Sequence record: LR756502.1
DNA length: 64,000 nt
Strand: one strand, 5' to 3'
Each line of letters begins with the position of its first letter. Within the stretch, counting starts at the first letter, position 1. The notes below the pieces were generated by a model. That model was not told where the DNA came from. It saw only the letters and a list, made by a program, of their open reading frames with translations, and made no database searches. Shown here piece by piece: positions 224 through 60,414 of this stretch. A program made the position numbers and the translations under genes.

Positions 224-1447
224 TTAGTCGTATCCTCCATCGGTATCTCGAAGTTCTCTATCGTGATCATTATCATAGTCATTTGTTAGTGTATCACTAT
301 CTGTGTCTAAAAGGAAGAATGTATCAAGATATGGATAATATTCAAAATCTGACTTTTTTAACTCAATAGTCTCTGAGGCTGACCTAGAATCTGTGCCATT
401 TTCCATTGTAAAATCATTATCAGAATCTTGGCTTCTTTTCCACCAAAATCCCTCTTTCTTACCAAACTCTTTGAATAAATCAACATCTGAATCTCTTAGA
501 GTATATATTCTGTCCATTATTTTATATCCTCTTGTTGTTGTCCATAGAATACATCTTCCAATTATTTTATCTGATGTGTATTTTCCATTCTCGTCAATTT
601 TTCCTGACTCATCATAAAGAATAACCATTTTACAGGTGTCCTTATTTTTGGTGTATATCTTGAACCATTTTTTAGGACCACCAGCCATACATGAGTTACC
701 TAGAACACCACCTTCTCCAGCGTAATTTTTATTGTTATACCAGTGTGCTATATCATCACCCTCGACTATATCAAATCTTATTAATGCATTTGCCATTAAG
801 TCATAAGTTGCTTTATATAAGTTAACAAACTCCTCAATATCTCTATCTATGAATGGTTCTTTGGCTGATGTTAGAATTGCTCTAACCAATCTACCTATTT
901 TAATATTGTTTCTAGATGTTGACCATATTTGATTGGATACTGAATCGGCTCTCTCTAATGCCTCTTTATTTAGTACAGTTTCCTTATCACTCCATTCTTC
1001 AATTCCCTTAAACCAAACATATATCTTACCGCTTCTTGGACTAACTACCTCTTTAACTATTATACCCATTGTGTCTTCACTTGGTGACCATACATCTGTT
1101 TTTTTCTCATATCCAAGTAGTCTGTATATTGGATCATTTCCAGGTGAGTTTGTTAGGTATTTTTCCTCTTCAATAACTTTATATGTCTCTTGACTGTCTT
1201 TTTCTAACTCTTGTACTTTTCTATCAGGTGTAAAAGAAACAGTGTCCTTTTCACTACCAACATCAACGTAGTTGTGTTGTAGTGTAATATCCTTACTATA
1301 TAAATCTATAAGCTTCTTAGCAATTTGATTAGTTTTCATTTTAGATAAAAAGTTAATAAGCTTTTTTGAGTAAACTAATTTGGATTCCAGTAATAGATCA
1401 TATATAACCTTCTCAGAAATATAATCATCGTATTTTTTAATATTCAT
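224..1447 (-). CDS. Hypothetical phage protein (GNSCM / GRCILW / MDRIY / YPYLDTF motifs) with N-terminal leader tag
   Basis: 407-aa ORF; starts MNIKKYDDYISE; TAATATATAC motif upstream. Confidence 0.8.
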   Translation of the reverse strand: MNIKKYDDYISEKVIYDLLLESKLVYSKKLINFLSKMKTNQIAKKLIDLYSKDITLQHNYVDVGSEKDTVSFTPDRKVQELEKDSQETYKVIEEEKYLTNSPGNDPIYRLLGYEKKTDVWSPSEDTMGIIVKEVVSPRSGKIYVWFKGIEEWSDKETVLNKEALERADSVSNQIWSTSRNNIKIGRLVRAILTSAKEPFIDRDIEEFVNLYKATYDLMANALIRFDIVEGDDIAHWYNNKNYAGEGGVLGNSCMAGGPKKWFKIYTKNKDTCKMVILYDESGKIDENGKYTSDKIIGRCILWTTTRGYKIMDRIYTLRDSDVDLFKEFGKKEGFWWKRSQDSDNDFTMENGTDSRSASETIELKKSDFEYYPYLDTFFLLDTDSDTLTNDYDNDHDRELRDTDGGYD

Positions 1448-1468
1448 AAAAGATTATTTTTTATTAGA

Positions 1469-1478
1469 GTATATATTA
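1469..1478 (-). promoter_or_regulatory. TAATATATA putative phage late-promoter motif
   Basis: TAATATATAC 22 nt upstream of the 1447 start; motif recurs upstream of many genes. Confidence 0.55.
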
Positions 1479-1535
1479 TTTATCTAATTTCAAAAGATAA
1501 AATAAAAGACAATTTTATTTTATTATATATATTTT

Positions 1536-1772
1536 ATGAAGAAAAAAGTAGCACAGATAATAAAAATATTAGGAATTGGTATAAATGAGTTGATAATTGA
1601 TATCGAACTCGATACTATAACAGTAAATTCTATTGAGTGGTCACCATCCGATAAAAAGATATATTTACATATTTTCAATGATGATATGGATATAGAGTTG
1701 GACTTTGATGATCTTTCTGATATTAATCAAGAAATTATATACAAAAATCTATCACAAATAACTTACAACTAG
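1536..1772 (+). CDS. Hypothetical protein
   Basis: 78-aa acidic ORF filling the gap, AT-rich leader. Confidence 0.6.
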   Translation: MKKKVAQIIKILGIGINELIIDIELDTITVNSIEWSPSDKKIYLHIFNDDMDIELDFDDLSDINQEIIYKNLSQITYN

Positions 1773-3918: not shown

Positions 3919-4335
3919 CTAATTTAGTTTATATAGATAAACATTTTTATAATCAGGATCATAGTCTGTTATCTCGAACCCCATTGACTTGTATAGGTTG
4001 TTTGCTACTTCATTTTCTGGATCACAATGTAGGTATATATTTGAGTATTGTTTTTTACCTTTATCAAATGATATTCCATCTTCTAATCTTTTTATTATAG
4101 TAGATAATGCTTTTTTTGAATATCCTTGTCCTCTAAAATCTTTGTATATTTTGAATGAATATATCCATATATCCCCATCATCTGGACTAAGTCCAATTCT
4201 ACCAATCTTCTCATCTCCTATATAAATAGGATATATATACCCTCCCAATTTACTCCTACTCTCTGGTGTGTATGATTCATATTCATTTGGAATGAAAACA
4301 TCATTAGTTTCTTTATATGTCTTTATGTGCTTCAT
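3919..4335 (-). CDS. GNAT-family acetyltransferase with N-terminal leader tag
   Basis: Motif A FKIYKDFRGQGYSKKAL and motif B NEVANNLYKSMGFE; starts MKHIKTYKE. Confidence 0.85.
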   Translation of the reverse strand: MKHIKTYKETNDVFIPNEYESYTPESRSKLGGYIYPIYIGDEKIGRIGLSPDDGDIWIYSFKIYKDFRGQGYSKKALSTIIKRLEDGISFDKGKKQYSNIYLHCDPENEVANNLYKSMGFEITDYDPDYKNVYLYKLN

Positions 4336-4347: not shown

Positions 4348-4902
4348 CTATTCAGTTTCTATTGAAAACTCTTCACCCTCTTCTTCGAATTGATCATCAA
4401 GCTCAATTTTAAGGTTTATTAGAAATTCCTCATTTATGTCTTTGATTTTAACATTTTTTGTTATTTGTCCAATCACCTCAAATGTATCTAAGTTATACTT
4501 CTTGAACTTAATATAACACTTCTCAATATCATCAGTTGAGAAGTCCTTATCTGGTTCTTTAGGAATAGCTTCCTTTAATTCAATCATTATATAAAGATTA
4601 TATGTTGCTTCATCATCAGAAAACTTAACATTTAAGTTATCGTACTGCTTTGAGTATTTGGATATTTCAGAGCTTTCGATTCTAACTCCTAAGTCCTTAA
4701 AGGTCATTGACTTTTCTTTGCTATCTGATTTAGCATCCTTGATTGACTTACCTTCTTCAGATTCTTGTTCTTTCTCACCTTCTTGGTATTCAAACATATT
4801 ATCTATCTTCTTCTTAATTTGTCTAAGAGCAGTTTCTATGTATGTCTCTGGTGTATCATTGAACTCCTCATTGATAAACTCTGTAAATTTTCTAATCTTC
4901 AT
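4348..4902 (-). CDS. Acidic hypothetical protein with N-terminal leader tag
   Basis: 184 aa; starts MKIRKFTEFINEE; TAATATATAC at 4907-4916. Confidence 0.75.
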   Translation of the reverse strand: MKIRKFTEFINEEFNDTPETYIETALRQIKKKIDNMFEYQEGEKEQESEEGKSIKDAKSDSKEKSMTFKDLGVRIESSEISKYSKQYDNLNVKFSDDEATYNLYIMIELKEAIPKEPDKDFSTDDIEKCYIKFKKYNLDTFEVIGQITKNVKIKDINEEFLINLKIELDDQFEEEGEEFSIETE

Positions 4903-9738: not shown

Positions 9739-11316
9739 TTACTTAACAAGTAAGTGAGGTGCTGACCATGTTGACTCTGACTTTGCGAAACTAACAATCT
9801 TTGATATTACTTTATTTGCTTCAATTTGTGGCATACTCTCTAACCATTCTAGAATAATTATAGATTGCATTCTTGAATTTTGGTCGGGAGTTTTTATTGT
9901 ACCAGTACTTATATCATCATAGAATATTTCTTGTAGATCTCTATCTTTGAACCTAAATCTCTCCTTATCAAGTAATTCAGCTATTTCCTCTTTATCTGTT
10001 GATGTTCTTATAAATTCCTTTATCTTAAAAAACTTTGGACCCATTATCGATTCTAAAATAGATCCAGCTTTACCACTCATGTGCTTTGCCTTTTTAGAAC
10101 CTTTTACTTCTAGTGATACTGATGAGTTGGTTGTTCTATCAAATGTCCTGCATTGAATCTCACTTCCACCAAAGAACTTTGATTTTTTACCAAATTTATA
10201 GGAGAAGTTTATTGTAACCGTTTTCTTATCATTGCTCATTTCATATCCATCATATTTGTGTATTGCTTTTTTAGGGTCAGCATTTACTATTGATAGGCTA
10301 CCAACATTTGATCCTTGTTTTAGTGATACTCCAATCAATCCTTTGTTATTTAATATAGAATCCATCAAGAATGAGTTCAAATCATCTATATCCGAGTTAC
10401 TTTCATACTCCTCCTCTTCGATATCGCCTAAACTCTCATATTTATCAAAGTCCTCCATGGTCCACTCATATCCATCAAATATTATCCATATATCACTTGG
10501 ATTCCACTTAGCTAGTGATAGTCTAGTTGGTAGGTCAATAATACCATAGTCATCATCAACTGGTATAGTTGCAAACTTACCGGTGCCTTTCGCTGTTGAC
10601 TCATCTTTTAGATATGTTGCTGCTACTTGATTTATTAATAAGTCTGTTGTGTTTTTTATAACATATGATACATTCTTAATGTCTTCGCCAAGATACGCTA
10701 TTAGCTTTCTACATTGGTCTCTCATAGCATTAACTGCTTGTATATTTTCACTCATAAAAGTATCATACTCATGTCTAAAGGCTCCTCTCTCATCATCCGA
10801 GATTTGAGATGTTCCGTCATTATTATATGCCATTTTTATAAAACCTCTATTTGATGATATCCTTAACTCAACCCTTTTTTCCGCCCACGCTTCAATTGCT
10901 AGTGTAATTATAAATGCTGTTTCTCTGAAGTGCTCACCTCTTTTGGCTGCTCCTACTTTATCTAACTGCCTAATCATTGTAGTTCTACTCCCTTTTTTAG
11001 CAACTGCCCAAGGAAATAATTTAGATGACGTTTGGTATATCATTAGCTCATCTATTAATGATCCACTGATTCCTAATTTTGACTTTAGTTCCGAGAATTT
11101 TATCTTTTGGATTGATGATGGTTTTAACCATAATACCTCTGTGTTTGCTGATGGTCTTTTTCTAGAATATGATAGAGTCATATCTTCTGTAATTCCAAAC
11201 CTATCGATGGCTAGTCTTCCATTTCTCGATAATATATAATTGATTCCTTCTTTAGTGCTATCTAATGTAGCCTCATTGACTTGTTGAAATCCTAAAAAAT
11301 TTGAAATAAATCTCAT
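9739..11316 (-). CDS. Putative PD-(D/E)xK-fold nuclease-like phage protein with N-terminal leader
   Basis: KWNPSDIWII...LIGVSLKQ motif pair; starts MRFISNFLGFQQVNE; TAATATATAG at 11321-11330. Confidence 0.55.
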   Translation of the reverse strand: MRFISNFLGFQQVNEATLDSTKEGINYILSRNGRLAIDRFGITEDMTLSYSRKRPSANTEVLWLKPSSIQKIKFSELKSKLGISGSLIDELMIYQTSSKLFPWAVAKKGSRTTMIRQLDKVGAAKRGEHFRETAFIITLAIEAWAEKRVELRISSNRGFIKMAYNNDGTSQISDDERGAFRHEYDTFMSENIQAVNAMRDQCRKLIAYLGEDIKNVSYVIKNTTDLLINQVAATYLKDESTAKGTGKFATIPVDDDYGIIDLPTRLSLAKWNPSDIWIIFDGYEWTMEDFDKYESLGDIEEEEYESNSDIDDLNSFLMDSILNNKGLIGVSLKQGSNVGSLSIVNADPKKAIHKYDGYEMSNDKKTVTINFSYKFGKKSKFFGGSEIQCRTFDRTTNSSVSLEVKGSKKAKHMSGKAGSILESIMGPKFFKIKEFIRTSTDKEEIAELLDKERFRFKDRDLQEIFYDDISTGTIKTPDQNSRMQSIIILEWLESMPQIEANKVISKIVSFAKSESTWSAPHLLVK

Positions 11317-13281: not shown

Positions 13282-13524
13282 TTACTCTCCTTCCATTTTA
13301 CTAAGTCTTGTGTAATAGTCAGGTATTTCTCTTAGGTGTGACTCCGCTATTTTCTTGTAGAATTCCATTTCGGACCAAGGCATTTGAACATTAAATGATT
13401 CAAGGTAACTATCTAGTTGTCTATATACATCACCATGTTCTGATTCTATCTTGATTCCTATTTCTAGTTGTTCTTGATCAAAATTATTATTTGATTCATT
13501 TATTTTATCTGTAAATTTTCTCAT
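13282..13524 (-). CDS. DUF5661-like small protein with N-terminal leader
   Basis: QLEIGIKIESEH...HLREIPDYYTRLSKME; starts MRKFTDKINES. Confidence 0.6.
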   Translation of the reverse strand: MRKFTDKINESNNNFDQEQLEIGIKIESEHGDVYRQLDSYLESFNVQMPWSEMEFYKKIAESHLREIPDYYTRLSKMEGE

Positions 13525-14196
13525 TTAATTATTTGGTTTTAATGGTATCTCTGGATTAATCTCAAATTGTTCATTAAGATATTTTCTTAATTCATTCTCT
13601 ATATAATGGTCCGGTACTTCTGTGGATGGATCAATTTCACCCATTTTCTTTGCTAAGTGTAGTGAGAACTTATGTACAATTTCTGGCTTAACTGCTTCTA
13701 TTAGTCTATCTGATACAACAAAAGCTCTTGTGAATCTATCCTTAACTTTTATCTCACCTTCCATAACCTTCATTGTGCTATCTATTATCTTCTTTAGGAA
13801 TGCTGAATAGTCACTACCAGGGTCTGCTAGTATTGGTGCTATTACCTTATTAAATGCTCTCGATGTGCCAAGTATATACCCTAGTATTGCTAGAATAGGA
13901 AAGAATGGGGCAAGTGCTATTGGTATTAATCTGTGTGCCATTTTAACAACTCCGACTTTTAGATCTGCTTTTTTCCTTGCTTCTATAGCATCTAAGAATA
14001 TAGCCTTTAATATACCAAATGTAAACTTTGTTCCTTTCTCTTTAAGATATTCCGCCAAGTGTCCTTTATTAGCTGATATTATATGATTTTTTAATTCATC
14101 TTCATCAGTTATACCAAGCCTTATTAGTTCGGTTTTGATATTACTATCAAATTTCTCTAAAATTAAAAAATGATTATATTTTATTATGTTCTTCAT
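13525..14196 (-). CDS. Hypothetical protein with N-terminal leader and central hydrophobic segment
   Basis: Starts MKNIIKYNHFLILE; hydrophobic LIPIALAPFFPILAILGYILG. Confidence 0.7.
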   Translation of the reverse strand: MKNIIKYNHFLILEKFDSNIKTELIRLGITDEDELKNHIISANKGHLAEYLKEKGTKFTFGILKAIFLDAIEARKKADLKVGVVKMAHRLIPIALAPFFPILAILGYILGTSRAFNKVIAPILADPGSDYSAFLKKIIDSTMKVMEGEIKVKDRFTRAFVVSDRLIEAVKPEIVHKFSLHLAKKMGEIDPSTEVPDHYIENELRKYLNEQFEINPEIPLKPNN

Positions 14197-31656: not shown

Positions 31657-32067
31657 TTACTCTCCTTCCTCACGAAAATATCCGTCTTCTTCTTCTTCAC
31701 CACTTCCAATGAAGCTTTCCGCATCTTCAATAATATAAACAAGTTCGTCTTGAATAGGGTTATTATTTTGCCAGAAGAATAATCTCATTATTTCCTCACC
31801 ATCCTTACTAAGTAAGTCAGTTATACCCATTGCCCAATCTAAACAGGATCCTTTTCTAATTTGATCTCCTTGCTTAGCAATAATTATACCATCTCTAACT
31901 TCTAGTATTTTACTTCCTGGGAAATAATCCTTTATGATATTAACAACCGATTCAATATCATTTTCAGTTGGTTTATAGATTTTAACATGTTTCATATCTA
32001 GCTTAAGATTCTTACCACTTGATTTAGTGTCCTCGTTACTTTCGTTAAATTTATTTAAGTGTTTCAT
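31657..32067 (-). CDS. Hypothetical protein with N-terminal leader
   Basis: Likely ATG at 32067: MKHLNKFNES. Confidence 0.65.
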   Translation of the reverse strand: MKHLNKFNESNEDTKSSGKNLKLDMKHVKIYKPTENDIESVVNIIKDYFPGSKILEVRDGIIIAKQGDQIRKGSCLDWAMGITDLLSKDGEEIMRLFFWQNNNPIQDELVYIIEDAESFIGSGEEEEDGYFREEGE

Positions 32068-32074: not shown

Positions 32075-32665
32075 TTATTTATTATATCCAAGCTGTTTTG
32101 CTCTAAAATAAAACTTATCAGCTATTTGATTCATAATTGTTCTTGGGAATTTGCCTTCTGTTGCCATTTGTTCAGCAGTTAATGCTCTCCAGAATGCCTT
32201 CTCACCATTCTTAATTTTGTCTGCCATCTCTGTTACTTGTTGTAACAACATATCTTTATCATCTTTGTATGATTTGTATATATCAATTATTCTTGTTCTA
32301 TGTGATAACATTTTACCTTTGTTAGATGATTCATTTATCTTTAAGTTTACTTCTTCTATTCCCTTATCTAGTGATTCCCAATCAGATATTTTTGATTTAA
32401 GACCTTCTAATAACTTAACCTTATCTTTTAGAGTTTTACTATCCATTAAATTCATAAGTGCTTCGATGAACATTTCCTTGCCCGCAATTTTAATACTGCC
32501 TGCTCTAAGATACCTATCAACTGGTCCATAAGTTCTTATGGTTAATAATTTTTCCATTAAATCTAATACACCATACTTAAATATATCTTCTTCAGTTATA
32601 AGTGTTTCTTTAACTTTAGGTTTCTCATTTATTTTTTGATTAGTTATATTACTAAACTTTTTCAT
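32075..32665 (-). CDS. Hypothetical helical protein with N-terminal leader
   Basis: Starts MKKFSNITNQKINE; TAATATATAA at 32689-32698. Confidence 0.7.
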   Translation of the reverse strand: MKKFSNITNQKINEKPKVKETLITEEDIFKYGVLDLMEKLLTIRTYGPVDRYLRAGSIKIAGKEMFIEALMNLMDSKTLKDKVKLLEGLKSKISDWESLDKGIEEVNLKINESSNKGKMLSHRTRIIDIYKSYKDDKDMLLQQVTEMADKIKNGEKAFWRALTAEQMATEGKFPRTIMNQIADKFYFRAKQLGYNK

Positions 32666-33985: not shown

Positions 33986-34522
33986 TTATTTTTTAACTTT
34001 CTTATCTGCAACCTTCTTAGGAGCCTTTTTAGGTTCTTCAACTTTCTTAGCTGCAACCTTTTTAGGAGCTGCTTTCTTAGCCGCAACCTTCTTAGCTGGT
34101 TTCTTTACTTCTTCCTTCTTAGCTGGTGACTTATCCTCTTTCTTTTTAGCAATAAAGTCTTTATTATCAACCTCATTTTTTTCTTCATACTTTTCTTTAG
34201 CATCCTTAGCTTCTGCTTCAGTTAATCCAATATAGTAATATGGGTAGTTTTCGTTATAGTGGTAGTTCTTTACTAAGATATGCTTAACACCTACCTTTTT
34301 ATCCGCTTTTAAGTCGTGTAATGCGTTTAGAACCTGATCAGTAGTATATTTTCCCTTAAGATATGCAATAATACCAGCTTGTGAATATGCTGACTTTTCA
34401 GTTGGCCAGTTTTTGCTACTCATTGTGACAGTTGGATTGCTGTTAAGCATCTTAAGAATCTCTTCTTTCGCGTCATCTTTTTTAGCTTCATTGATGAACT
34501 GATTATATCTTTTCACTTCCAT
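33986..34522 (-). CDS. Protein with N-terminal leader and Lys/Ala/Pro-rich histone-H1-like tail
   Basis: Starts MEVKRYNQFINEAKK; ends PAKKVAAKKAAPKKVAAKKVEEPKKAPKKVADKKVKK. Confidence 0.8.
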   Translation of the reverse strand: MEVKRYNQFINEAKKDDAKEEILKMLNSNPTVTMSSKNWPTEKSAYSQAGIIAYLKGKYTTDQVLNALHDLKADKKVGVKHILVKNYHYNENYPYYYIGLTEAEAKDAKEKYEEKNEVDNKDFIAKKKEDKSPAKKEEVKKPAKKVAAKKAAPKKVAAKKVEEPKKAPKKVADKKVKK

Positions 34523-35705: not shown

Positions 35706-35707
35706 AT

Positions 35708-43193: not shown

Positions 43194-43634
43194 CTATTTT
43201 TCCCCAAAGTTATTCTCCCTATCTAATTCTACTATTAGTGTGTCCAGCTTAACTCCCTTTAGTTTTTCTAAAATGTTGGCTGATGAGTTGATATAATATG
43301 GTCTTCTCTTTTTAGTTGAAACACCAGAAATACTATATGTTATATGATATTTATATTTTAGATTATTTGAATCACAATATGACTCAAAGCTCTTGAGTGT
43401 ATCAATAATCTCCTCGATAAAAAATCCTTTTAGCCTACCTGGTCCCATCCAAGCAGACATAATGGTTATATTCCACGAAATTACACCGGTATATGCATCT
43501 ATTGAAAACCCATCATCAGATATTGGATAGAGATAGTCTAGTGAATCTATTATAAATTGTGGTAAATCATCCTCTCTTGTAAATGGATGTGGTGTCTCAG
43601 ATTCAAATAGGCTATATGGTTTAAGATGGTTCAT
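43194..43634 (-). CDS. Hypothetical protein with N-terminal leader
   Basis: Starts MNHLKPYSLFES. Confidence 0.65.
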   Translation of the reverse strand: MNHLKPYSLFESETPHPFTREDDLPQFIIDSLDYLYPISDDGFSIDAYTGVISWNITIMSAWMGPGRLKGFFIEEIIDTLKSFESYCDSNNLKYKYHITYSISGVSTKKRRPYYINSSANILEKLKGVKLDTLIVELDRENNFGEK

Positions 43635-45006
43635 CAATCTCTAACATTTTCTTAGAAACTTTGTAATTGAAGTCCTCTGAAAGGTCAAATTTGTACTTAG
43701 CTGATAGCTTACCACTCATCTCACCTCCAGAAAATCTAACAGATATATTCATATTTATTAGTGGTTTATCATCTAATTCCAAAACTATTTTTATAGTAAA
43801 GTCATTATTCTCTTCCTCTTCATTAACAATAAACTTAACATGATAATCAAATTTAATAACCAAATCATCATAGAATTTTCTAAAAAATTCTCTTGATGGT
43901 ACTTGATGGAAGTAGTTGCCATTGTTACCAAGGAAGTAAACAGGTCTTTCTAGACAACCTATTTTTTCAACAATTGTTTTGAATAGCTTCATCTTTACCG
44001 TTCCATCCGCTATTTTAAAACCATCTTCTGTTCTAACTATATCATCTTGATGAGTTGACTTTAGTGAGTCCGTTAATAAGTGTTCTAGTATTTTTGAGTT
44101 TAGAATAAATACTTTAGTCTCCATCCATTCTTTATATACCCTCTCGGTGTCCATAAAACAATTATCTCTATTTTTCCATATCTCACTCATTAGGTCAGAG
44201 AACTTAAGAATATTTTTATCAAAGTCTTTAATAAATTCACCTAGATGTTTAAATCTTGGGTCTCTATGTCTTATATCATAATACTCAAAGTATCCAATTG
44301 TATCAATTCTATTTGGATCAATAAACTTTTCTATATGCTGTTGTATATTTTTGTTTGCATTCTCATATACAACCTTTACCCACTCTTGAGTAAGCTTATT
44401 CCATTTACCTAGATATTCTTCTTTATAAAGATTATCCATATCCTGTCCAATCAAATCATCCGCAAATAGATTGAAGCTTGCTGACTTCTGTGAGCTTAAG
44501 TTCTTATTTAAGAAGAAACTATATTGCTTACCATCTGCTGTTTCAATTACTATATCCTCTTGATGTTCGGCGTCTTTATTTGGTCCAACCCAAAAAACTG
44601 CAGTTACTCTATCAGGTGATAGTTTTTCATCCGGGATAAGCTTATCTATAATGTTGCGTGCAGTTGTTCTTGCTGATATAAGTTTATCCCAGTCTTCCTC
44701 AATGCTAAATTCAACTGAGTCAAATAGTCCATTTATCTTTGATACTTCATCATCTGAAACACATTTATTATTCTCCACGAATTTACCAAGATGTAATCTA
44801 TTATTAGATAATAATAGATTTTTAAGATCTGTTAAAAATACACTAGAGTCTTCGCTATATCTAGCTTTCAACCCTTTGTCTAGTATATTATCAAGAAATT
44901 CATTATTTAATATAACCATACTGACACAAATCTCAAGAATAATATTCTTATTGGAGTATTCCTTCTTAGACTCTGTAAATAATTTATAACCTCTTAGCCA
45001 CTTCAT
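43621..45006 (-). CDS. Hypothetical protein with N-terminal leader
   Basis: True start likely ATG 45006 (MKWLRGYKLFTES), not the track's 45153. Confidence 0.75.
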   Translation of the reverse strand: MKWLRGYKLFTESKKEYSNKNIILEICVSMVILNNEFLDNILDKGLKARYSEDSSVFLTDLKNLLLSNNRLHLGKFVENNKCVSDDEVSKINGLFDSVEFSIEEDWDKLISARTTARNIIDKLIPDEKLSPDRVTAVFWVGPNKDAEHQEDIVIETADGKQYSFFLNKNLSSQKSASFNLFADDLIGQDMDNLYKEEYLGKWNKLTQEWVKVVYENANKNIQQHIEKFIDPNRIDTIGYFEYYDIRHRDPRFKHLGEFIKDFDKNILKFSDLMSEIWKNRDNCFMDTERVYKEWMETKVFILNSKILEHLLTDSLKSTHQDDIVRTEDGFKIADGTVKMKLFKTIVEKIGCLERPVYFLGNNGNYFHQVPSREFFRKFYDDLVIKFDYHVKFIVNEEEENNDFTIKIVLELDDKPLINMNISVRFSGGEMSGKLSAKYKFDLSEDFNYKVSKKMLEIDEPS

Positions 45007-45043: not shown

Positions 45044-45085
45044 CCATCAATCCGATTTATGAAATTGATGAAGTAAAAGATAAAA

Positions 45086-45715
45086 ATGAAATATCTAAAA
45101 AAATATAAAAAGTATAAAGAGTCCTTAGAGATTGATCTGGCGCTATATAACATTGATTTAATGGAGTCATTAAATCTTTGGCATGATGTAATTCTTAATT
45201 CAATAGGTGCTGAAGAGATGGATATCTATGAAACATTTAAGTTACCAAAAGATCAGTACCAAGGTAGAATGAATATCGACTTTTTATCAAATGATGTTGA
45301 ATTTATTAATTCATTAGCTAGTATTGGATTAAAGAAATCACCTATACAAAGTACAGATGACTATGCTACTTTTATAAATAAACCTTGTAAATTTATGTTT
45401 ATTTATGGGGTTGAGTCAAATGAGTTAGAAAATCCAATGTATATATTGTTTGAGAGTTGGAACGAGACTTTAAGTAAGTGGCAAGATGGTAGACTATATA
45501 AGGTTAATGATGATGTTAAACGATTCTATGATAAATTATCATCAAAAACAATTGAGATAACTGATGGTGATCAGAACTACATATATTCAACTTCTAATGG
45601 TAGTGAATGGGAGCTTCAAAATAATAAGGAAAGTGAAATATACCAAAAGGTATTTAGAAAGGATGAGTTTGAGAAGCTTATAAATGACCGAAAGGCAAAG
45701 CTAAAAATTATTTAA
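45086..45715 (+). CDS. Hypothetical protein with N-terminal leader
   Basis: Starts MKYLKKYKKYKES. Confidence 0.75.
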   Translation: MKYLKKYKKYKESLEIDLALYNIDLMESLNLWHDVILNSIGAEEMDIYETFKLPKDQYQGRMNIDFLSNDVEFINSLASIGLKKSPIQSTDDYATFINKPCKFMFIYGVESNELENPMYILFESWNETLSKWQDGRLYKVNDDVKRFYDKLSSKTIEITDGDQNYIYSTSNGSEWELQNNKESEIYQKVFRKDEFEKLINDRKAKLKII

Positions 45716-47423: not shown

Positions 47424-47450
47424 TATTTCTTGGTAAAAGTGGTTCTGGTA
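47417..47450 (+). pseudogene. Remnant of the original gmk 5' end (P-loop)
   Basis: gaa ata ata ttt ctt ggt aaa agt ggt tct ggt a = EIIFLGKSGSG, no ATG, mirrors gmk CIIMGPSGSGK. Confidence 0.6.
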
Positions 47451-47466
47451 GCTTAATATATAGACT

Positions 47467-48270: not shown

Positions 48271-48283
48271 TTTACAATATAAA

Positions 48284-48848: not shown

Positions 48849-49472
48849 CTACTTACACTTTATAACAAAAGCTGCCTTTCTTGTTAAGAAACCAAAATTT
48901 GCTTCGAAATATGTATATTTAACACCATCTATCTCAAAAGCATTCTCATCATTCTTATATCCTTTATTTACTAAAATGTAATCAAAGCTTGACCAAAATG
49001 ATGGAACTCTTAATATTCTATAATCACTAGTCTCTTTAACAACTTCTAACTCATTCAGATTAACTTGTTGACCATTTGGTAGGTCATTCTTATTAGTTGT
49101 AGCATAGATATATGATCCCCATGTACTTGTTTTATAGTATATAGTCGATACTCCTTCTTCAACAGTTACCGCGTAGTCACTACTCTTTCCTGCTTGTCTA
49201 TAAGTACCAATTACTCCATCATTTTTATTAATTGATATATTTAGATTAGCATCAAAAAATTGAGCAGTGTGTATATGATATTCTGGGAAGTTAGATAGTT
49301 CTGTCTCTTGATAAGATGCTTTTGATTTACCTGGTGTGGTATCAATTGAATGAATACCAGCAGCTAAGCCTCCTACTAGAGCTCCTCCGATGAGTAATTT
49401 TGCAGGAACAGTAAACTTCTTCATATCTACTTCTTCGTTACAGAAGTCATTATAGTTTTTAATATTCTTCAT
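48849..49472 (-). CDS. Hypothetical protein with N-terminal leader followed by a TM-like segment
   Basis: MKNIKNYNDFCNEE...LLIGGALVGGLAAGI. Confidence 0.7.
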   Translation of the reverse strand: MKNIKNYNDFCNEEVDMKKFTVPAKLLIGGALVGGLAAGIHSIDTTPGKSKASYQETELSNFPEYHIHTAQFFDANLNISINKNDGVIGTYRQAGKSSDYAVTVEEGVSTIYYKTSTWGSYIYATTNKNDLPNGQQVNLNELEVVKETSDYRILRVPSFWSSFDYILVNKGYKNDENAFEIDGVKYTYFEANFGFLTRKAAFVIKCK

Positions 49473-55652: not shown

Positions 55653-56618
55653 CTAAACAATATTTATCTCATGAATGCTTTTGTGAGTAACTAAACTATT
55701 TATTGCTTTAGCTATTAGTCTATCACATGATACGATTGTTAGCTTTGATGAATCTATATCTTGGTTAGACTTAATTGTGTCCGAAACAATTAGCTCAGTT
55801 AACTTTGATAGTTCAAGATTCTCATATGCCTTACCACTTAATACTCCGTGTGTTGCAATTGCTCTAACAGATTTGGCCCCGTGTTCCATAACTAACTCAC
55901 TTGCCTTTTTCATTGTTCCGAGTGTATCTGCCATATCATCCACTATGACAACATTTCTACCAGTTACATCACCAACAAGTTCCATTGAGTGAATCTCATT
56001 CGGTTTTACTCTCTTCTTGTTAATCATTGCAAATGTTGCCTCTGGGAATGCTTTTGTGAAGTCTGATGCTCTCTTAACCGCTCCTTGATCAGGTGCTATG
56101 ATTGTTAAGTCTTCTATATTGTGATTTTTAATATGTTCGATGAATATCTTGTTACCATTTAAGTGAATAACTGGTACGTTATAGAACCCTTGAATAGCTG
56201 ACGCATGTAAGTCAATTGTTATTATTCTTGTCATGCCTGTTTTCTCTAATATATCCGCTAACACCTTTGATCCAATTGATGAACGAAGATGGTCTGTCTT
56301 ATCTTGACGTGAATATGATTGAAATGGAGCTATTAATGTGAATGACTTACACCCTGCTCTTTTAGCAGCATCAATAACTAATAGTGTTTCTATAATAGAA
56401 TCTGACGTATTTGTTGTCTGTACAAAGAATACATCTTCATCCCTAATAGTCTCGTTGAATAGTGGCAACATTTCTCCGTCGGAGAACTTATCGATTTGTA
56501 GTCTACCTAGAGAAATCTTCTCAAAGTCTAAATCTGATGATGAATTTTTAATTTCATTCAATGAATTACAAATTCTATTTGCTAATTCCTTACTAGATGT
56601 TCCGCTGAATAGTTTCAT
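55653..56618 (-). CDS. prs: Ribose-phosphate pyrophosphokinase
   Basis: FSDGE, YSRQDK, DLHASAIQGFY, APDQGAVKRA, KKR, VDDMADTLGT, THGVLSG. Confidence 0.95.
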   Translation of the reverse strand: MKLFSGTSSKELANRICNSLNEIKNSSSDLDFEKISLGRLQIDKFSDGEMLPLFNETIRDEDVFFVQTTNTSDSIIETLLVIDAAKRAGCKSFTLIAPFQSYSRQDKTDHLRSSIGSKVLADILEKTGMTRIITIDLHASAIQGFYNVPVIHLNGNKIFIEHIKNHNIEDLTIIAPDQGAVKRASDFTKAFPEATFAMINKKRVKPNEIHSMELVGDVTGRNVVIVDDMADTLGTMKKASELVMEHGAKSVRAIATHGVLSGKAYENLELSKLTELIVSDTIKSNQDIDSSKLTIVSCDRLIAKAINSLVTHKSIHEINIV

Positions 56619-57395: not shown

Positions 57396-58400
57396 CTATA
57401 TATTTGTATTTTTCTGCCAATTCCAAGCACTATTCATCATTTCTTCCACTCCGAGCTCTGCCTTCCATCCTAATTTCTCCTCTGCTTTTGATGAGTCTGA
57501 GTATATTTGTATTACATCTCCTGGTCTTCTATCTGAGATTTTATAATTTACTTTTAATCCATTTTCTTTCTCAAATGCTTTTATCATTTCAAGTACAGTT
57601 ATACCAGATCCACTTCCTAAGTTGAATATATCATACTTTATATCATTCTTACCACTTAATAGGAAATCAATTGCCTTGACATGTGCTTTTGCAATATCAA
57701 CAACATGTATATAATCTCTAACCGCTGTGCCGTCTCTTGTTGGGTAGTCTGATCCAAATACATTCATCTCTTCATTATTAAATACTGAATTGCATATAAC
57801 TGGTACAAGATTATTTGGCTTGTTTATTGGTGACTCTCCGATAAGACCACTATTATGAGCACCGACTGGATTAAAATATCTTAATGATATTGCATTGAAG
57901 TCTCTTGAATTACAAAAGTCTTTAATTATTTGCTCACCAACTAATTTTGTATTTGCATATGGTGATTCTGGGTATGATATAGGAGTGTTCTCATTTACTG
58001 GTAGATTATCGACATTACCATATACTGAACAAGATGATGAGAATATGAAATTATTTATATTGAATCCACCACAATGCTTTAATATATTTAATAGACCATT
58101 GATATTATTATCATAATATTTGATTGGATCTTCTACTGACTCACTTACTGATTTATGTGCAGCAAAGTGTATTACTCCATCAATTTTTTGATGATCCATT
58201 ATATCATCTAGTTGATCTCTTATATCTCTCGCATAGAACTTTACATATCTACCAGTTATTTGGTGTATTTTGTTTAGTGTTATTGGATTGGAGTTATCAA
58301 AGTTATCAAACACAATTACATCATATCCACTATTTAGTAATTCAACAACTGTGTGTGATCCAATATATCCTGACCCACCTGTTACTAATATTGTCTTCAT
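57396..58400 (-). CDS. galE: UDP-glucose 4-epimerase
   Basis: GGSGYIGSHT, HFAAHKSVSES, FSSSCSVYG, PYANTK, LRYFNPVGAH, DGTAVRDYIHVVD. Confidence 0.95.
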   Translation of the reverse strand: MKTILVTGGSGYIGSHTVVELLNSGYDVIVFDNFDNSNPITLNKIHQITGRYVKFYARDIRDQLDDIMDHQKIDGVIHFAAHKSVSESVEDPIKYYDNNINGLLNILKHCGGFNINNFIFSSSCSVYGNVDNLPVNENTPISYPESPYANTKLVGEQIIKDFCNSRDFNAISLRYFNPVGAHNSGLIGESPINKPNNLVPVICNSVFNNEEMNVFGSDYPTRDGTAVRDYIHVVDIAKAHVKAIDFLLSGKNDIKYDIFNLGSGSGITVLEMIKAFEKENGLKVNYKISDRRPGDVIQIYSDSSKAEEKLGWKAELGVEEMMNSAWNWQKNTNI

Positions 58401-58867
58401 TAGTTTATTATTTTTGATAAATCCGCTGCTGAGTATTTTACTGACTTTAGAATCTTATCATCACCATTTCTGTATACGATATACTTACCATTCAATTCTT
58501 TGTAATACCCTTCTGTGCCATCTTTCTTCTTGTAGTGAGATAGAGTTTCAATTGCCTCTTGTATGGATGAACATGCCTTACTCATGTTACTTCTTTGTAC
58601 CTCATCGAATAATTCTATGAATTTATCACCAAATCCGAACTCAAGAACAGCTCCAGACAAGACATATTGTAAGTCACAAAGTGCATCGGATATTTCTACT
58701 AAATCTCCATCTTTTATAGCTTGTGATAATTCATCAAGTTCTTCTTGTAGAAGACTTACCCTTAGTTCACATCTCTGTTCTGATGGTATCTGTGGTTTGT
58801 CAAGTATTGGTGCGTTAAATGTTTTGTGAAATTCAGCTACCTGGTTTAATGCGTCTAATTTTTTCAT
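58400..58867 (-). CDS. MazG-like nucleoside-triphosphate pyrophosphohydrolase
   Basis: EFHKTF...LLQEELDEL...ISDALCDLQYV...EVQRSNMSK. Confidence 0.85.
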   Translation of the reverse strand: MKKLDALNQVAEFHKTFNAPILDKPQIPSEQRCELRVSLLQEELDELSQAIKDGDLVEISDALCDLQYVLSGAVLEFGFGDKFIELFDEVQRSNMSKACSSIQEAIETLSHYKKKDGTEGYYKELNGKYIVYRNGDDKILKSVKYSAADLSKIIN

Positions 58868-58931
58868 AAGAATAATTTTGGTTATTATATGATAAAACTA
58901 ATTTATAGTTCATTAAAATAATATATAGTTT

Positions 58932-60002
58932 ATGAAACATTTGAGAAATTTTGATAAGTTTAAGAAGTCTAATGTTAACGAAGAGCTTCTTGGTGGTCTA
59001 ATGAATTGGTTCAAGAACATGTGGAATAAAGCAGTTAAAGACCTTGAGGGTTTGGAAGATGATCCAAACAAAATAAAGGAATGGGTAATAAATAATGCTT
59101 TGAACCCAAAAGATGATACAAATGTTTTCTCACAAGTACTTAAAGATTTTCAGAAGAAAGATAAAGCAAATGATCAAGACTGCTTAACACTTATTGACAA
59201 CTTACTTGATCCTGAGACTGGTTCACTTGGTAAGCAAGGTATCGGTGTTTTATTATCAAATAAAGCTCTACAAGGTGAGAAGTTAAAGGCTAAGAGAGTA
59301 ATGTTAGAATATATTGTGACTACTGCTAGAAATCAAACAATTGCTAAGATTAAGTTTGCTGGTGGTCCAAAGGATGGTAAGATAGACCCGAAGAAAAAGA
59401 ATATTGATTTGAAAGATACAAATCATCTACCTGATTTAAAGAAGATATTAATTGCTCAGAAAACGGATGAGAAGAAAAAGAAGGACGAGACTATTAAATG
59501 GGTTAATGTAACATTTATACCAATGATTCAGAATTTTGTTAAGGCGATAAAAGAAGATGATATTAGAGCAGCACTCACAAAGCAAGGAATTGAATTATCT
59601 GGTGGTGATTATAAAGAAGGTGATAGTGTTATCTATCTATTAAAAGATAAGACTAAAGAGGAGTGGGATAAGCTAACAGATGATCAGAAAAAGTTAACAG
59701 CTGAAGCCCCTGCAAATACAATAGTTGGAGTACATAAGATAGAGAAGATAGAAGGTGATAATGTTACCCTATTGGATAAGGATGATAAACCAACAATTGT
59801 AAAGACTAAGGAGGATATTATTGGTAAGTCTGAAGTCGAGAAGGGTCCTAATGCTCAAGATTTGGCTAAAAAACTTGGTGATATTAAAACAGATGAGGAT
59901 AAAATGAAGAAAGTATCCAGTTATGTTGACTTCATGAATGATGCCGCAAATAAAGATAAGATCGCCGAGATTGATAAAATAATTGGCGGTGGTGGTGCTT
60001 AG
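58932..60002 (+). CDS. Lys/Asp-rich hypothetical protein with N-terminal leader
   Basis: Starts MKHLRNFDKFKKSNVNEE; TAATATATAG at 58919-58928. Confidence 0.75.
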   Translation: MKHLRNFDKFKKSNVNEELLGGLMNWFKNMWNKAVKDLEGLEDDPNKIKEWVINNALNPKDDTNVFSQVLKDFQKKDKANDQDCLTLIDNLLDPETGSLGKQGIGVLLSNKALQGEKLKAKRVMLEYIVTTARNQTIAKIKFAGGPKDGKIDPKKKNIDLKDTNHLPDLKKILIAQKTDEKKKKDETIKWVNVTFIPMIQNFVKAIKEDDIRAALTKQGIELSGGDYKEGDSVIYLLKDKTKEEWDKLTDDQKKLTAEAPANTIVGVHKIEKIEGDNVTLLDKDDKPTIVKTKEDIIGKSEVEKGPNAQDLAKKLGDIKTDEDKMKKVSSYVDFMNDAANKDKIAEIDKIIGGGGA

Positions 60003-60414
60003 TAATTTCAAACAATTTAATGAGTCTAATTCAAACTTTATGTCAGAAGATGATGTTAAGGATATATTTATTGATATAATCGATGAGGGGTTTGATGTTG
60101 AGTTCTTCCGTGTGAGGTCAGAGAATGAGTGTGTGTACTCTGGCAAGTACTTTTTTGAGTTTAGAAAAAATCTATCAAACGAATCACTGGGATATATTGA
60201 TGTTGGAGATGTTGATGGATATACTAACCTTAATAACATGAAGTCTCAATTAGATATATTTGATATATTAATCGACATAAAAACCAGAGTAAACTCACTT
60301 GGATATACAATATCTTTTGGATATGAATCATCATTAACATCAACCTCCGATAACCAAGTGATTTTAATTTGCAATATGCAACATTCGAAACTTGATTCAG
60401 ACTCTCTTGATTAA
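59995..60414 (+). CDS. Hypothetical protein with N-terminal leader
   Basis: Probable GTG start: MLSNFKQFNES. Confidence 0.65.
   Translation: MLSNFKQFNESNSNFMSEDDVKDIFIDIIDEGFDVEFFRVRSENECVYSGKYFFEFRKNLSNESLGYIDVGDVDGYTNLNNMKSQLDIFDILIDIKTRVNSLGYTISFGYESSLTSTSDNQVILICNMQHSKLDSDSLD

What the first reader, a model, noticed from the sequence alone, without database searches (positions are those of the whole stretch)
224..60414. About 17 proteins begin with a T4 capsid-targeting-sequence-like leader
Seen in sequence: MNIKKYDDYISE (224), MKHIKTYKE (3919), MKIRKFTEFINE (4348), MRFISNFLGFQQVNE (9739), MRKFTDKINE (13282), MKNIIKYNHFLILE (13525), MKHLNKFNE (31657), MKKFSNITNQKINE (32075), MEVKRYNQFINE (33986), MNHLKPYSLFE (43194), MKWLRGYKLFTE (43621), MKYLKKYKKYKE (45086), MKNIKNYNDFCNE (48849), MKHLRNFDKFKKSNVNE (58932), MLSNFKQFNE (59995), and weaker versions at 46442 and 52694. 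Established: T4 internal protein III uses the N-terminal sequence MKTYQEFIAE for packaging into the prohead, and gp21 protease removes it after Glu. Inference: this phage has expanded that system into a large cargo programme that packages and probably injects many unrelated proteins.
Basis: partly seen in the sequence, partly recalled or inferred. Interest (0 to 1): 0.8.

Follow-up and report, generated by a model that had tools for sequence, protein, structure and literature searches.

The report
Capsid-targeting leaders on 185 phage proteins
A 642-kb "huge" phage puts the same short, T4-like head-targeting tag on about one in six of its proteins (12-15 of them in this window). This suggests that much of its unexplained gene content is cargo loaded into the capsid and delivered to the host, although no experiment has shown this yet.

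Summary
The window is positions 496,001-560,000 of LR756502.1, a 642-kb uncultured Mahaphage.

Genome-wide the leader heads 176-185 of 1,006 ORFs, against about 1-3 expected by shuffling. It sits on at least 130 unrelated protein bodies, and selection acts on the peptide rather than the DNA.

A scoring matrix trained only on these leaders places all three T4 internal proteins in the top 4 of 800 T4 ORFs. The genome encodes a T4-type portal, a gp23-type capsid protein and a gp21-type protease with the catalytic His and Ser conserved. That protease is fused to a scaffold-like domain with about 11 repeats of Y-S-E-Y-I/L-A-E, which resembles both the T4 targeting sequence and the leader.

In the cultured relative PAU, 4 of 5 annotated "internal capsid proteins" carry the equivalent leader. 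Leader genes also share a TAATATATA element with head, terminase and lysis genes.

Best reading: a greatly expanded T4-type capsid-targeting system. Packaging, cleavage and injection remain inferred.

The parts
224..1447 (-). Leader ORF, 407 aa, starts MNIKKYDDYISE
   Evidence: PSSM 15.8 bits. No Pfam or PHROG hit. Belongs to a 9-member paralog family whose other members carry intact or degenerate leaders.
3919..4335 (-). Leader ORF, 138 aa, starts MKHIKTYKE, followed by a GNAT acetyltransferase domain
   Evidence: PSSM 24.7. Pfam Acetyltransf_1 E 1.5e-10 on residues 27-120, so the leader and a linker lie outside the fold. An 85%-identical homologue keeps the leader as MKYIKTYKE.
4348..4902 (-). 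Leader ORF, 184 aa, starts MKIRKFTEFINE (K-x-F-x-x-F-I-x-E, the T4-CTS pattern)
   Evidence: PSSM 17.2. TAATATATA begins 13-14 nt upstream of the ATG. No Pfam hit.
13525..14196 (-). Leader ORF, 223 aa, starts MKNIIKYNHFLILE
   Evidence: PSSM 17.8. No Pfam hit.
31657..32067 (-). Leader ORF, 136 aa, starts MKHLNKFNE at an ATG 8 codons inside the TTG ORF 31657-32091
   Evidence: PSSM 28.9, the best in the window. No Pfam hit.
33986..34522 (-). Leader ORF, 178 aa, starts MEVKRYNQFINE (K-x-Y-x-x-F-I-x-E)
   Evidence: PSSM 15.8. Only a sub-threshold HC2 hit on the lysine-rich C-terminus.
43194..43634 (-). Leader ORF, 146 aa, starts MNHLKPYSLFE
   Evidence: PSSM 26.3. Weak member (E 2.8e-4) of the 46-member 'DILLDLxDDGF' paralog family.
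43621..45006 (-). Leader ORF, 461 aa, starts MKWLRGYKLFTE. The longest ORF runs up to 45153, but the leader ATG is at 45006.
   Evidence: PSSM 22.2. AATATA[TA] lies 33 nt upstream. No Pfam hit.
45086..45715 (+). Leader ORF, 209 aa, starts MKYLKKYKKYKE
   Evidence: PSSM 24.6. No Pfam hit.
48849..49472 (-). Leader ORF, 207 aa, starts MKNIKNYNDFCNE
   Evidence: PSSM 25.9. Paralog of record 95990-96634, which also carries a leader.
58932..60002 (+). Leader ORF, 356 aa, starts MKHLRNFDKFKKSNVNE
   Evidence: PSSM 21.4. AATATATA starts 12 nt upstream of the ATG. No Pfam or PHROG hit.
59995..60414 (+). Leader ORF, 139 aa, GTG start, (M)LSNFKQFNE. A shortened leader on a body with a 'DIFIDIIDEGF' stretch resembling the 'DILLDLxDDGF' family motif (no significant family match).
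   Evidence: PSSM 14.8. Body motif seen.
9739..11316 (-). Weak variant leader, 525 aa, starts MRFISNFLGFQQVNE
   Evidence: PSSM only 6.4, but TAATATATA begins 13-14 nt upstream of the ATG. PHROG 1462, unknown function, E 4.4e-16 on residues 269-522.
13282..13524 (-). Weak variant leader, 80 aa, starts MRKFTDKINE, on a DUF5661 protein
   Evidence: PSSM 2.1. Pfam DUF5661 E 4.6e-12 on residues 15-79.
32075..32665 (-). Weak variant leader, 196 aa, starts MKKFSNITNQKINE
   Evidence: PSSM 2.8. AATATA[TA] lies 32 nt upstream. No Pfam hit.

Best explanation
The leader is a capsid targeting sequence (CTS) of the T4 kind, expanded to about 185 genes.

Proposed sequence of events:
1. The tagged genes are transcribed with the head, terminase and lysis genes from a TAATATATA promoter-like element.
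2. The 9-13-residue N-terminal leader, with hydrophobic residues at positions 4, 7 and 10/11, docks each protein onto the prohead core. That core is built by the fused protease-scaffold protein. Its roughly 11 tandem 14-residue repeats carry the same heptad (Y-S-E-Y-I/L-A-E).
3. The gp23-type shell closes around the core on the gp20-type portal.
4. The gp21-type serine protease cuts after Glu in hydrophobic-x-Glu sites. This shreds the scaffold, trims the capsid protein and removes the leader.
5. The freed proteins stay in the head with the DNA and enter the host at infection as ready-made effectors.

Shown here from sequence: the leader, its modularity, its match to the T4 CTS, the T4-type head genes, the conserved catalytic residues, the shared upstream element and the PAU annotation. 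Inferred: docking, cleavage, retention in the head and injection.
For: Enrichment: 176 ORFs score 12 bits or more against 1.2 expected. The regex gives 64 hits against 4.0 +/- 2.1 expected.

The signal is a peptide, not DNA. Synonymous codons are used much as in the rest of the genome, and conservation starts at the ATG.

The leader is modular. The 185 bodies fall into 134 jackhmmer components, 121 of them singletons. It sits on GNAT, lysozyme, Rnl1-like RNA ligase, NUDIX, SET, methyltransferase, 2H/Acb1-like and HNH folds. In the RNA ligase the family profile starts at residue 27.

Match to T4: IpII, IpI and IpIII rank 2-4 of 800 T4 ORFs under this phage's PSSM, with scores of 12.8-13.0 against 6.5 for the sixth-ranked ORF, the best score below the top five. 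By my own hand calculation the chance probability is about 5e-8. The aromatic i/i+3 pair and the I-x-E match the T4 residues 4 and 7 (targeting) and 8 and 10 (processing).

Cleavage-type site: 157 of 185 have [ILVFYMW]-x-E ending at residues 7-20, with modes at 9 and 11. An E occurs at residues 8-14 in 178 of 185, against 34% of other proteins.

Head machinery: Portal_T4 E 1.3e-57 and Gp23 E 3.7e-28. The protease matches PHROG 207 at 6.1e-28 and PAU gp151 at 2.6e-22, and its H72 and S127 align with T4 gp21 H85 and S140. The scaffold carries Y-S-E-Y-[IL]-A-E repeats, and the capsid protein has ..FHQINE at residues 38-43.

Cultured relative PAU: 19 of 292 ORFs carry MK[TS][IL]xxLYE, against 0.04 expected. 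They include 4 of the 5 genes annotated 'internal capsid protein' (hypergeometric p about 6e-5, hand calculation). N-terminal sequencing shows that the PAU capsid protein loses about 65 residues, which places the cut at or beside L-M-E64.

Co-regulation: AATATATA lies 8-45 nt upstream of 91 of 185 leader genes against 102 of 821 others. The same element precedes the portal, protease, capsid protein, terminase and endolysin genes, but not replication or metabolism genes.

The tagged proteins look soluble: 2% have a transmembrane segment against 11% of the others.

The leader is virus-specific: 30 IMG/VR stretches match an exact leader pattern, against 1 match in 185,579 bacterial and archaeal species genomes.
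Against: There is no virion proteome or N-terminal data for this uncultured phage. The basis of the PAU 'internal capsid protein' notes is not stated in the record.

About 185 cargo species would be unprecedented. T4 has about 4 and PAU 19.

The bodies are mostly acidic (72% with pI below 6), unlike the T4 internal proteins, which the review cited describes as basic.

Some tagged proteins are homologues of enzymes that are not virion components in T4: the Rnl1-like ligase, NUDIX, an endolysin-type lysozyme and methyltransferases. One matches a 'DNA primase' PHROG.

28 of 185 lack a clear hydrophobic-x-E site in the first 20 residues.

The Pfam Peptidase_S77 score is below the gathering cut-off (20.2 against 27). 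A PDB sequence search did not return gp21.

76 leader genes have the upstream element only 5 nt from the ATG. Part of the conservation of the first codons could therefore reflect translation of leaderless mRNAs.
Confidence: 0.6

Rival explanations
1. The leader does take proteins into the prohead core and is cut there. However, most tagged proteins would be core or filler components that help build a very large capsid and are then degraded or expelled, as T4 gp22, gp67 and gp68 are. They would not be effectors kept and injected.
For: The leader resembles one unit of the scaffold repeat. Most bodies are small and acidic, like scaffold proteins. One 46-member paralog family accounts for 41 of the 185. 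In PAU the gene annotated 'scaffolding' (gp152) carries the leader itself, and 14 of 19 leader genes lie inside the head-gene block at 100-121 kb.
Against: The leader also sits on recognisable enzymes: GNAT, SET, NUDIX, RNA ligase, lysozyme, HNH and 2H phosphoesterase. These would be pointless as filler. 121 bodies are unique. The PAU proteins are annotated as internal capsid proteins.
Confidence: 0.15
2. The leader addresses proteins to some other destination or partner, for example a membrane site, an assembly factory, a chaperone or another protease. The 458-aa peptidase next to the capsid gene is one candidate partner. The resemblance to the T4 CTS would then be convergent.
For: A second peptidase (PHROG 4191, E 3.2e-64) lies just after the capsid gene. 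No partner has been shown. The 9-residue (..YNES) and 11-residue (..YKIFES) forms are shorter than the T4 pattern.
Against: The leader is hydrophilic and amphipathic, not a Sec or lipoprotein signal. Tagged proteins are depleted in membrane segments. T4 internal proteins are picked out specifically by the PSSM. The PAU internal capsid proteins carry the equivalent tag.
Confidence: 0.08
3. The conserved start is an mRNA-level signal, needed for example to translate leaderless late transcripts, rather than a peptide signal.
For: In 76 leader genes TAATATATA ends 5 nt before the ATG. With T4-late-promoter geometry this would start the transcript at the AUG. The first codons are A-rich.
Against: Third codon positions carry much less information than second positions, and His, Leu and Glu use their synonymous codons freely. 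94 leader genes have no such element within 45 nt, and many are translationally coupled inside operons. 47 non-leader genes have the near-ATG element. Substitutions keep the amino-acid class (Y/F, I/L, K/R).
Confidence: 0.07
4. The shared start is simply the inherited N-terminus of one large gene family, or a by-product of the 30% G+C composition, with no addressing role.
For: 41 of the leader proteins belong to one family. K, N, I, Y and F are the cheap residues in an AT-rich genome.
Against: Shuffled N-termini of the same composition give 1.2 hits against 176. AT-rich control sequence gives none at 12 bits or more: Lak-B1 (26% G+C), a 50-kb piece of LR756504 (27%) and PAU (31%). The bodies form 134 unrelated components and include several unrelated enzyme folds.
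Confidence: 0.05

Closest known systems
T4 capsid targeting sequence on the internal proteins IpI, IpII and IpIII (and the Alt propeptide), removed by the gp21 prohead protease
   Same: An N-terminal tag of about 10 residues with the same pattern, K-x-Y/F-x-x-F-I-x-E, ending at a hydrophobic-x-Glu site. The tag is modular and sits on unrelated bodies. The same genome encodes a gp20-type portal, a gp23-type capsid protein and a gp21-type protease.
   Different: About 185 tagged genes (18% of ORFs) against 3-4 in T4. Shorter 9- and 11-residue forms dominate (MKHLKxYNES, MKHLKxYKIFES). The bodies are mostly acidic rather than basic. The protease is fused to the scaffold, and the scaffold repeats resemble the tag; T4 gp22, gp67 and gp68 show no such heptad. 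Nothing has been shown experimentally.
Sphingomonas (Sphingobacterium) phage PAU 'internal capsid proteins' gp142, gp154, gp199 and gp270 (GenBank JQ362498 annotation)
   Same: The same clade by capsid protein and protease homology. A stereotyped N-terminal tag of the same length up to the first Glu (MKTISKLYE against MKHLKKYNE), often followed by AKLNE. The tag is attached to many small ORFs.
   Different: The PAU tag has a different sequence and scores below threshold with this phage's PSSM. PAU has 19 tagged genes, mostly clustered with the head genes, and its protease and scaffold are separate genes. No paper describing the PAU tag was found.
Ejection and inner-body proteins of phiKZ-like giant phages (phiKZ, SPN3US), processed by gp175/gp245
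   Same: Many head-internal proteins carry N-terminal propeptides thought to target them to the prohead. A gp21-related protease cuts them after Glu.
   Different: Those propeptides are mostly over 100 residues long and are not one shared short tag. Only about eight SPN3US head proteins were reported as cleaved (abstract listed). That lineage does not have T4-type portal and capsid genes.
Cargo-loading peptides of encapsulins (own knowledge)
   Same: A short terminal peptide is enough to load unrelated cargo into an HK97-fold shell.
   Different: The encapsulin peptide is C-terminal, binds the shell protein itself, is not cleaved, and involves no DNA or delivery to another cell.

Membership tests
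T4-type capsid targeting sequence (CTS) | A short (10-19 residue) propeptide at the extreme N-terminus | tested here: met
   The leader starts at Met1. In 173 of 185 ORFs this is the first possible start codon after the upstream stop. The first Glu of a hydrophobic-x-E site falls at residue 9 or 11 in most cases.
T4-type capsid targeting sequence (CTS) | Targeting determinants at residues 4 and 7 (Tyr, Phe) and processing determinants at residues 8 and 10 (Ile, Glu), as mapped in IpIII | tested here: met
   The consensus has Y/F at position 0 and F at +3. In the long form it also has I/V at +4 and E at +6, the same spacing as in T4. T4 IpI, IpII and IpIII rank 2-4 of 800 ORFs under this phage's PSSM. 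The short forms keep the aromatic residue and the Glu but change the spacing.
T4-type capsid targeting sequence (CTS) | The tag is portable: the same tag on unrelated proteins | tested here: met
   134 jackhmmer components, 121 of them singletons, and several unrelated Pfam folds. The RNA-ligase and GNAT profiles start at residue 27.
T4-type capsid targeting sequence (CTS) | A gp21-family prohead protease and a T4-type head module in the same genome | tested here: met
   Portal_T4 E 1.3e-57 and Gp23 E 3.7e-28. Protease: PHROG 207 E 6.1e-28, with H72 and S127 aligned to T4 gp21 H85 and S140.
T4-type capsid targeting sequence (CTS) | Tagged proteins are found inside proheads and virions, and the tag is removed after Glu | not testable with these tools
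   There is only indirect evidence. PAU annotation marks 4 of 5 internal capsid proteins as tag-bearing. The PAU capsid protein loses about 65 residues, next to L-M-E64.
T4 internal proteins (IpI-III) as a protein family | Small basic bodies homologous to IpI, IpII or IpIII | tested here: not met
   72% of bodies have pI below 6. Neither Pfam nor PHROGs returned an internal-protein family for the 150 longest tagged proteins. The resemblance is confined to the tag.
Peptidase S77 (T4 gp21 prohead protease) | Catalytic His and Ser in the GE(L/F)xHP and VSSRxxG motifs | tested here: met
   Alignment with T4 gp21 and PAU gp151. Residue numbering was checked.
Peptidase S77 (T4 gp21 prohead protease) | Score above Pfam's gathering threshold | tested here: not met
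   PF03420 gives 20.2 bits against a cut-off of 27, E 4.6e-4. This is offset by PHROG 207 at 99 bits and by the gene's position between portal and capsid genes.
T4 gp22-type scaffold | Sequence homology to gp22 | tested here: inconclusive
   phmmer with T4 gp22 found nothing convincing (best E 0.008, to an 89-aa ORF). The scaffold role of the protease's C-terminal repeat region rests on three things: its position, its composition, and the PTm1 annotation 'prohead core scaffolding protein and protease' for the equivalent fused gene.
phiKZ-like ejection or inner-body proteins | Long (over 100 residue) propeptides | tested here: not met
   The leaders here are 9-17 residues long with a hydrophobic residue at P3.

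The most novel reading that the evidence does not exclude
Nearly a fifth of the genes of the largest known phages would encode a capsid-delivered arsenal of over 100 different pre-made proteins. Each would be addressed by a 9-13-residue tag that mimics one repeat of the phage's own scaffold. Growth of this cargo set (T4 about 4, PAU 19, Mahaphage about 185) would then be one driver of genome and capsid gigantism.
Probability: 0.35. Interest if true: 0.9.

Novelty: new variant of a known kind. Interest (0 to 1): 0.75.

Why it matters
Most genes of huge phages have no assigned role. If a 10-residue tag marks about 18% of them as head cargo, then hundreds of orphan genes in this genome, and many more in related metagenomic contigs, gain a testable location and timing: made late, loaded into the prohead, and present in the host at time zero.

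It would also show that the T4 CTS system is ancient and scalable. It suggests how the tag is read, as a mimic of the scaffold repeat. It offers natural tag variants for loading proteins into phage capsids. And it gives a simple sequence rule for finding candidate injected counter-defence proteins such as acetyltransferases, a SET methyltransferase, an Acb1-like phosphoesterase and an RNA ligase.

Tried and rejected
- A PDB sequence search with the protease N-domain returned only chance coiled-coil hits, not gp21. Identity was settled instead with PHROGs, PAU gp151 and a motif alignment.
- A fixed-register upstream base profile showed no promoter. The TAATATATA element appeared only with k-mer enrichment on genes that have intergenic spacers.
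- phmmer with T4 gp22, gp67 and gp68 found no homologues. These T4 core proteins contain no [YF]xx[FY][ILV]xE heptad, so the idea that the tag mimics the scaffold cannot be extended to T4.
- Tenacibaculum phage PTm1 (45 kb around its head genes) shows no stereotyped leader. The sampled 50-kb pieces of LR756504 and Lak-B1 gave no PSSM hits either.
- The homologue search with the GNAT protein gave only 5 hits. This was too few to contrast with cellular GNATs.
- Full-text searches found no paper linking a CTS to huge phages, Lak phages or PAU.
- Composition and paralogy explanations were tested and rejected.
- Structure prediction of the protease was not attempted, because its locus came from a tool whose sequences that service does not accept.

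Full report
**What the window is.** The window is identical to positions 496,001-560,000 of LR756502.1, an unannotated 642,428-bp "uncultured phage". This is one of the four largest complete genomes described by Al-Shayeb et al. 2020. It belongs to the Mahaphage clade, whose members are predicted to infect Bacteroidetes. The window has about 30% G+C, no tRNA genes and no N. It encodes both T4-type topoisomerase II subunits. It also encodes an SprB-repeat protein with a type IX secretion C-terminal domain, which fits a Bacteroidota host. I fetched the rest of the record in 50-kb pieces and analysed it piece by piece. A simple greedy ORF call gave 1,006 ORFs covering 94.6% of the genome.

**Checking the observation.**
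- Twelve score 14.8-28.9 bits with a position matrix (PSSM) for the leader.
- Three (9739, 13282, 32075) are weak variants that share only the ..[IV]NE ending.

The pattern is far beyond chance. A hand-written regex hits 64 of 1,006 N-termini. It hits 4.0 +/- 2.1 in shuffled N-termini of the same composition, 3 of 1,655 decoy ORFs and 12 of 3,489 internal Met positions.

**Extent across the genome.** An iterated PSSM anchored on the aromatic residue finds 176 ORFs at 12 bits or more (1.2 expected) and 185 at 10 bits or more (3.2 expected). This is still an undercount, because several paralogs carry degenerate leaders.
- The consensus is M-K-[HY]-[LI]-K-x-[YF], followed by N-E-S, by K-[IL]-F-E-S, or by x-x-F-[IV]-N-E.
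- The window's 12-15 leader genes are therefore a sample of a feature that marks about 18% of ORFs and 17% of the encoded residues.

**A peptide signal, and a modular one.**
- Conservation begins exactly at the ATG. Third codon positions carry little information. His, Leu and Glu use their synonymous codons about as freely as in the rest of the genome.
- With the leader removed, the 185 bodies fall into 147 BLAST components, or 134 jackhmmer components with 121 singletons. The one large family, with a shared "DILLDLxDDGF" motif, has 46 members, 41 of them tagged.
- Recognisable bodies include two GNAT acetyltransferases (one in the window at 3919-4335), a phage lysozyme, a T4 Rnl1-like RNA ligase, NUDIX, SAM methyltransferases, a SET domain, a 2H/Acb1-like phosphoesterase, HNH nucleases and DUF5661.
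- In the GNAT and the RNA ligase the family profile begins at residue 27, so the leader plus a linker is an add-on.
- Tagged proteins are small (median 163 aa), mostly acidic (72% with pI below 6) and depleted in membrane segments (2% against 11% of the others).

**Is the leader like the T4 CTS?** I translated the whole T4 record and scored 800 ATG-ORF N-termini with the PSSM trained only on the huge phage.
- The top five are gp61.1 (13.2), IpII (13.0), IpI (12.9), IpIII (12.8) and MobB (12.6). The next best score is 6.5.
- Three named ORFs landing in the top four of 800 has a chance probability of about 5e-8 (hand calculation).
- T4 genetics places targeting at CTS residues 4 and 7 and processing at residues 8 and 10 (citing Mullaney and Black 1996). 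The conserved Y/F, F, I/V and E of the long leader form have exactly that spacing.
- 157 of 185 leaders contain a hydrophobic-x-Glu site ending at residues 7-20, with modes at 9 and 11. This is the T4 gp21 type of site.

**The machinery that would read the tag.** The same genome has a T4-type head module.
- The portal lies at record 222,545-224,260 (Pfam Portal_T4, E 1.3e-57).
- The capsid protein lies at 227,452-229,167 (Pfam Gp23, E 3.7e-28).
- Between them, at 225,272-227,371, is a 699-aa protein. Its N-terminal domain matches PHROG 207 "head maturation protease" (E 6.1e-28), PAU gp151 "capsid maturation protease" (E 2.6e-22) and T4 gp21 (E 1e-3).
- The Pfam Peptidase_S77 hit on that domain is below the gathering threshold.
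- In the alignment, its H72 and S127 coincide with T4 gp21 H85 and S140 in the GE(L/F)xHP and VSSRxxG motifs.
- The C-terminal part holds about 11 tandem 14-residue repeats, NLDKNIxYSEY[IL]AE. These are conserved in LR756501 and LR756504. Tenacibaculum phage PTm1 has the equivalent fused gene, annotated "prohead core scaffolding protein and protease".
- The repeat heptad Y-S-E-Y-I-A-E resembles both the core of the T4 CTS and the long leader form (Y-N-Q-F-I-N-E). The capsid protein has ..FHQINE at residues 38-43.
- I infer that the tag is read as a single scaffold-like unit and is cut at the same kind of site as the scaffold.

**A cultured relative.** The capsid protein's relatives in the phage collection are the other huge phages, the Lak phages and several cultured phages of Bacteroidota. 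One of these is PAU, whose host is in fact a Sphingobacterium.
- PAU has its own version of the tag, MK[TS][IL]xxLYE, often followed by AKLNE. It occurs on 19 of 292 ORFs, against 0.04 expected by shuffling, and 14 of the 19 lie inside the head-gene block.
- The depositors annotated five genes as "internal capsid protein". Four of them (gp142, gp154, gp199, gp270) carry the tag, as does "scaffolding" gp152. The hypergeometric p is about 6e-5 (hand calculation).
- The basis of those notes is not stated. Only 4 of the 19 tagged genes, and one untagged gene, are so labelled, which suggests the notes were not derived from the tag.
- N-terminal sequencing showed that the PAU capsid protein matures from 585 to 520 residues. 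That places the cut within one residue of L-M-E64.

**Distribution.**
- The MKHLKxY.. form recurs in LR745206 (9 of 104 ORFs in a 50-kb piece), LR756501 (4 of 58) and LR756500 (2 of 47).
- An exact back-translated pattern for MKHLKxYKIFE found 30 stretches in IMG/VR, on contigs of up to 476 kb. In those stretches 79 of 328 ORFs carry a leader.
- The same pattern found one match in 185,579 bacterial and archaeal species genomes.
- AT-rich control sequence (Lak-B1, a piece of LR756504, PAU) gives no PSSM hits.

**Regulation (found in passing).**
- TAATATATA occurs 211 times in the genome, and 165 copies lie 8-45 nt upstream of a same-strand start codon. Two spacings are preferred.
- AATATATA precedes 91 of 185 leader genes, against 102 of 821 others.
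- The element starts 26-36 nt upstream of the portal, protease, capsid protein, tail-tube and adjacent peptidase genes.
- The 95 untagged genes that have the element include the terminase, portal, protease, capsid protein and endolysins. A length-matched set without it holds topoisomerase, helicases, SbcC, NAD-salvage and nucleotide-metabolism genes.
- It therefore looks like a late promoter, comparable to T4's TATAAATA (own knowledge). Cargo would then be made when proheads assemble.
- In 76 leader genes the element ends 5 nt before the ATG, which would give leaderless mRNAs. This is an inference.

**Mechanism and confidence.** I judge the T4-type CTS reading the most likely, at about 0.6.
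- Capacity is not a barrier. T4 carries about 1,000 internal-protein copies plus 40 copies of Alt for 169 kb of DNA. This is an inference.
- The main rival (0.15) keeps the targeting and cleavage but treats most tagged proteins as disposable core material.
- The other rivals are a different destination (0.08), an mRNA-level signal (0.07), and paralogy or composition (0.05).
- Points against the preferred reading: the acidic bodies, the tagged homologues of enzymes that are not virion proteins in T4, the 28 leaders without a clear cleavage site, and the complete lack of experimental data for this phage.

**Novelty.** The kind of system, a CTS with a gp21-type protease, is known. The reviews note that T4 relatives carry variable internal proteins with CTS-like starts.
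- What I did not find in the searchable literature is a CTS-like tag in the PAU, Lak or Mahaphage lineage.
- Nor did I find its expansion to hundreds of genes, or its resemblance to scaffold repeats.
- I therefore rate it a new variant of a known kind.

Noticed in passing
window 58919-58927 (+), just upstream of the ATG at 58932. Also upstream of the ATGs at 4902(-) and 11316(-). 211 copies genome-wide.: TAATATATA is a strongly oriented, positioned upstream element. 165 of 211 copies lie 8-45 nt before a same-strand start codon, at two preferred spacings (about 13 nt and about 30 nt). It precedes head, terminase and lysis genes and half of the leader genes. It is a probable late promoter, and the 13-nt class would give leaderless mRNAs.
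   Followed up: partly
L005:29272-31371 (record 225,272-227,371): The prohead protease is fused to a scaffold-like region with about 11 tandem 14-residue repeats (NLDKNIxYSEY[IL]AE). The repeats are conserved in LR756501 and LR756504 and weaker in LR756500. The repeat heptad resembles the T4 CTS core.
   Followed up: partly
L017:18966-19130 (-), T4 gene 61.1: The uncharacterised 54-aa T4 protein gp61.1 starts MKTFKEFIKE. It scores higher than the three internal proteins with the leader PSSM, so it may be an unrecognised CTS-bearing T4 protein.
   Followed up: no
window 18378-23390 (+): A 1,670-aa phage-encoded protein with a signal peptide, 12 SprB repeats, a PKD domain and a CHU_C type IX secretion sorting domain. 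It lies in a stretch of higher G+C (38%). It looks like a host-type gliding or adhesin surface protein and points to a Bacteroidota host.
   Followed up: partly
window 23947-27007, 55653-56618 and 57396-58400: Host-like metabolic genes lie in a row or nearby: a SpoVR-like protein (E 2.4e-157), a glutamate-synthase-domain protein, PRPP synthetase and an NAD-dependent sugar epimerase/dehydratase. None carries the leader.
   Followed up: no
L005:33975-35351 (record 229,975-231,351): A second peptidase (PHROG 4191, E 3.2e-64, no Pfam hit) lies two genes after the capsid gene, with the TAATATATA element upstream. An NFACT-R RNA-binding-domain protein sits between them.
   Followed up: no
L001:13051-13518 and about 45 paralogs, mostly record 10-45 kb. 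In the window, 43194-43637 is a weak member; 59995-60414 shows a similar motif but did not match.: A 46-member paralog family of small acidic proteins shares a 'DILLDLxDDGF' motif 20-40 residues after the leader. It is densely arrayed near one end of the record. Its function is unknown.
   Followed up: partly
L023:5320-6384 (+), 34813-36051 (-) and 47308-48348 (+) (Lak-B1): Lak megaphage ORFs show a different recurrent start, MNKLIKKL[MV]E[GS]LFDD.. or ..LNESLFDD. This may be a lineage-specific counterpart of the leader.
   Followed up: no
P0003 and P0004: Distant homologues of the window's GNAT lie on contigs of 779,616 and 726,793 bp and start MQKFTEHVE or MKKFTEHVE. Contigs of the same size class as, or larger than, the published 735-kb record therefore exist in the protein collection.
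   Followed up: no
L055:2186-2218 (-), contig JAIOYD010000005.1: The only exact MKHLKxYKIFE match in 185,579 species genomes is on an 18-kb contig binned into a Rickettsiaceae MAG. It may be a mis-binned phage contig.
   Followed up: no
window 43621-45153 (-) and 31657-32091 (-): The longest-ORF starts are probably wrong for these two genes. The leader ATGs at 45006 and 32067 are the likely true starts. Automatic annotation of such genomes may therefore hide leaders behind upstream TTG, GTG or ATG codons.
   Followed up: partly
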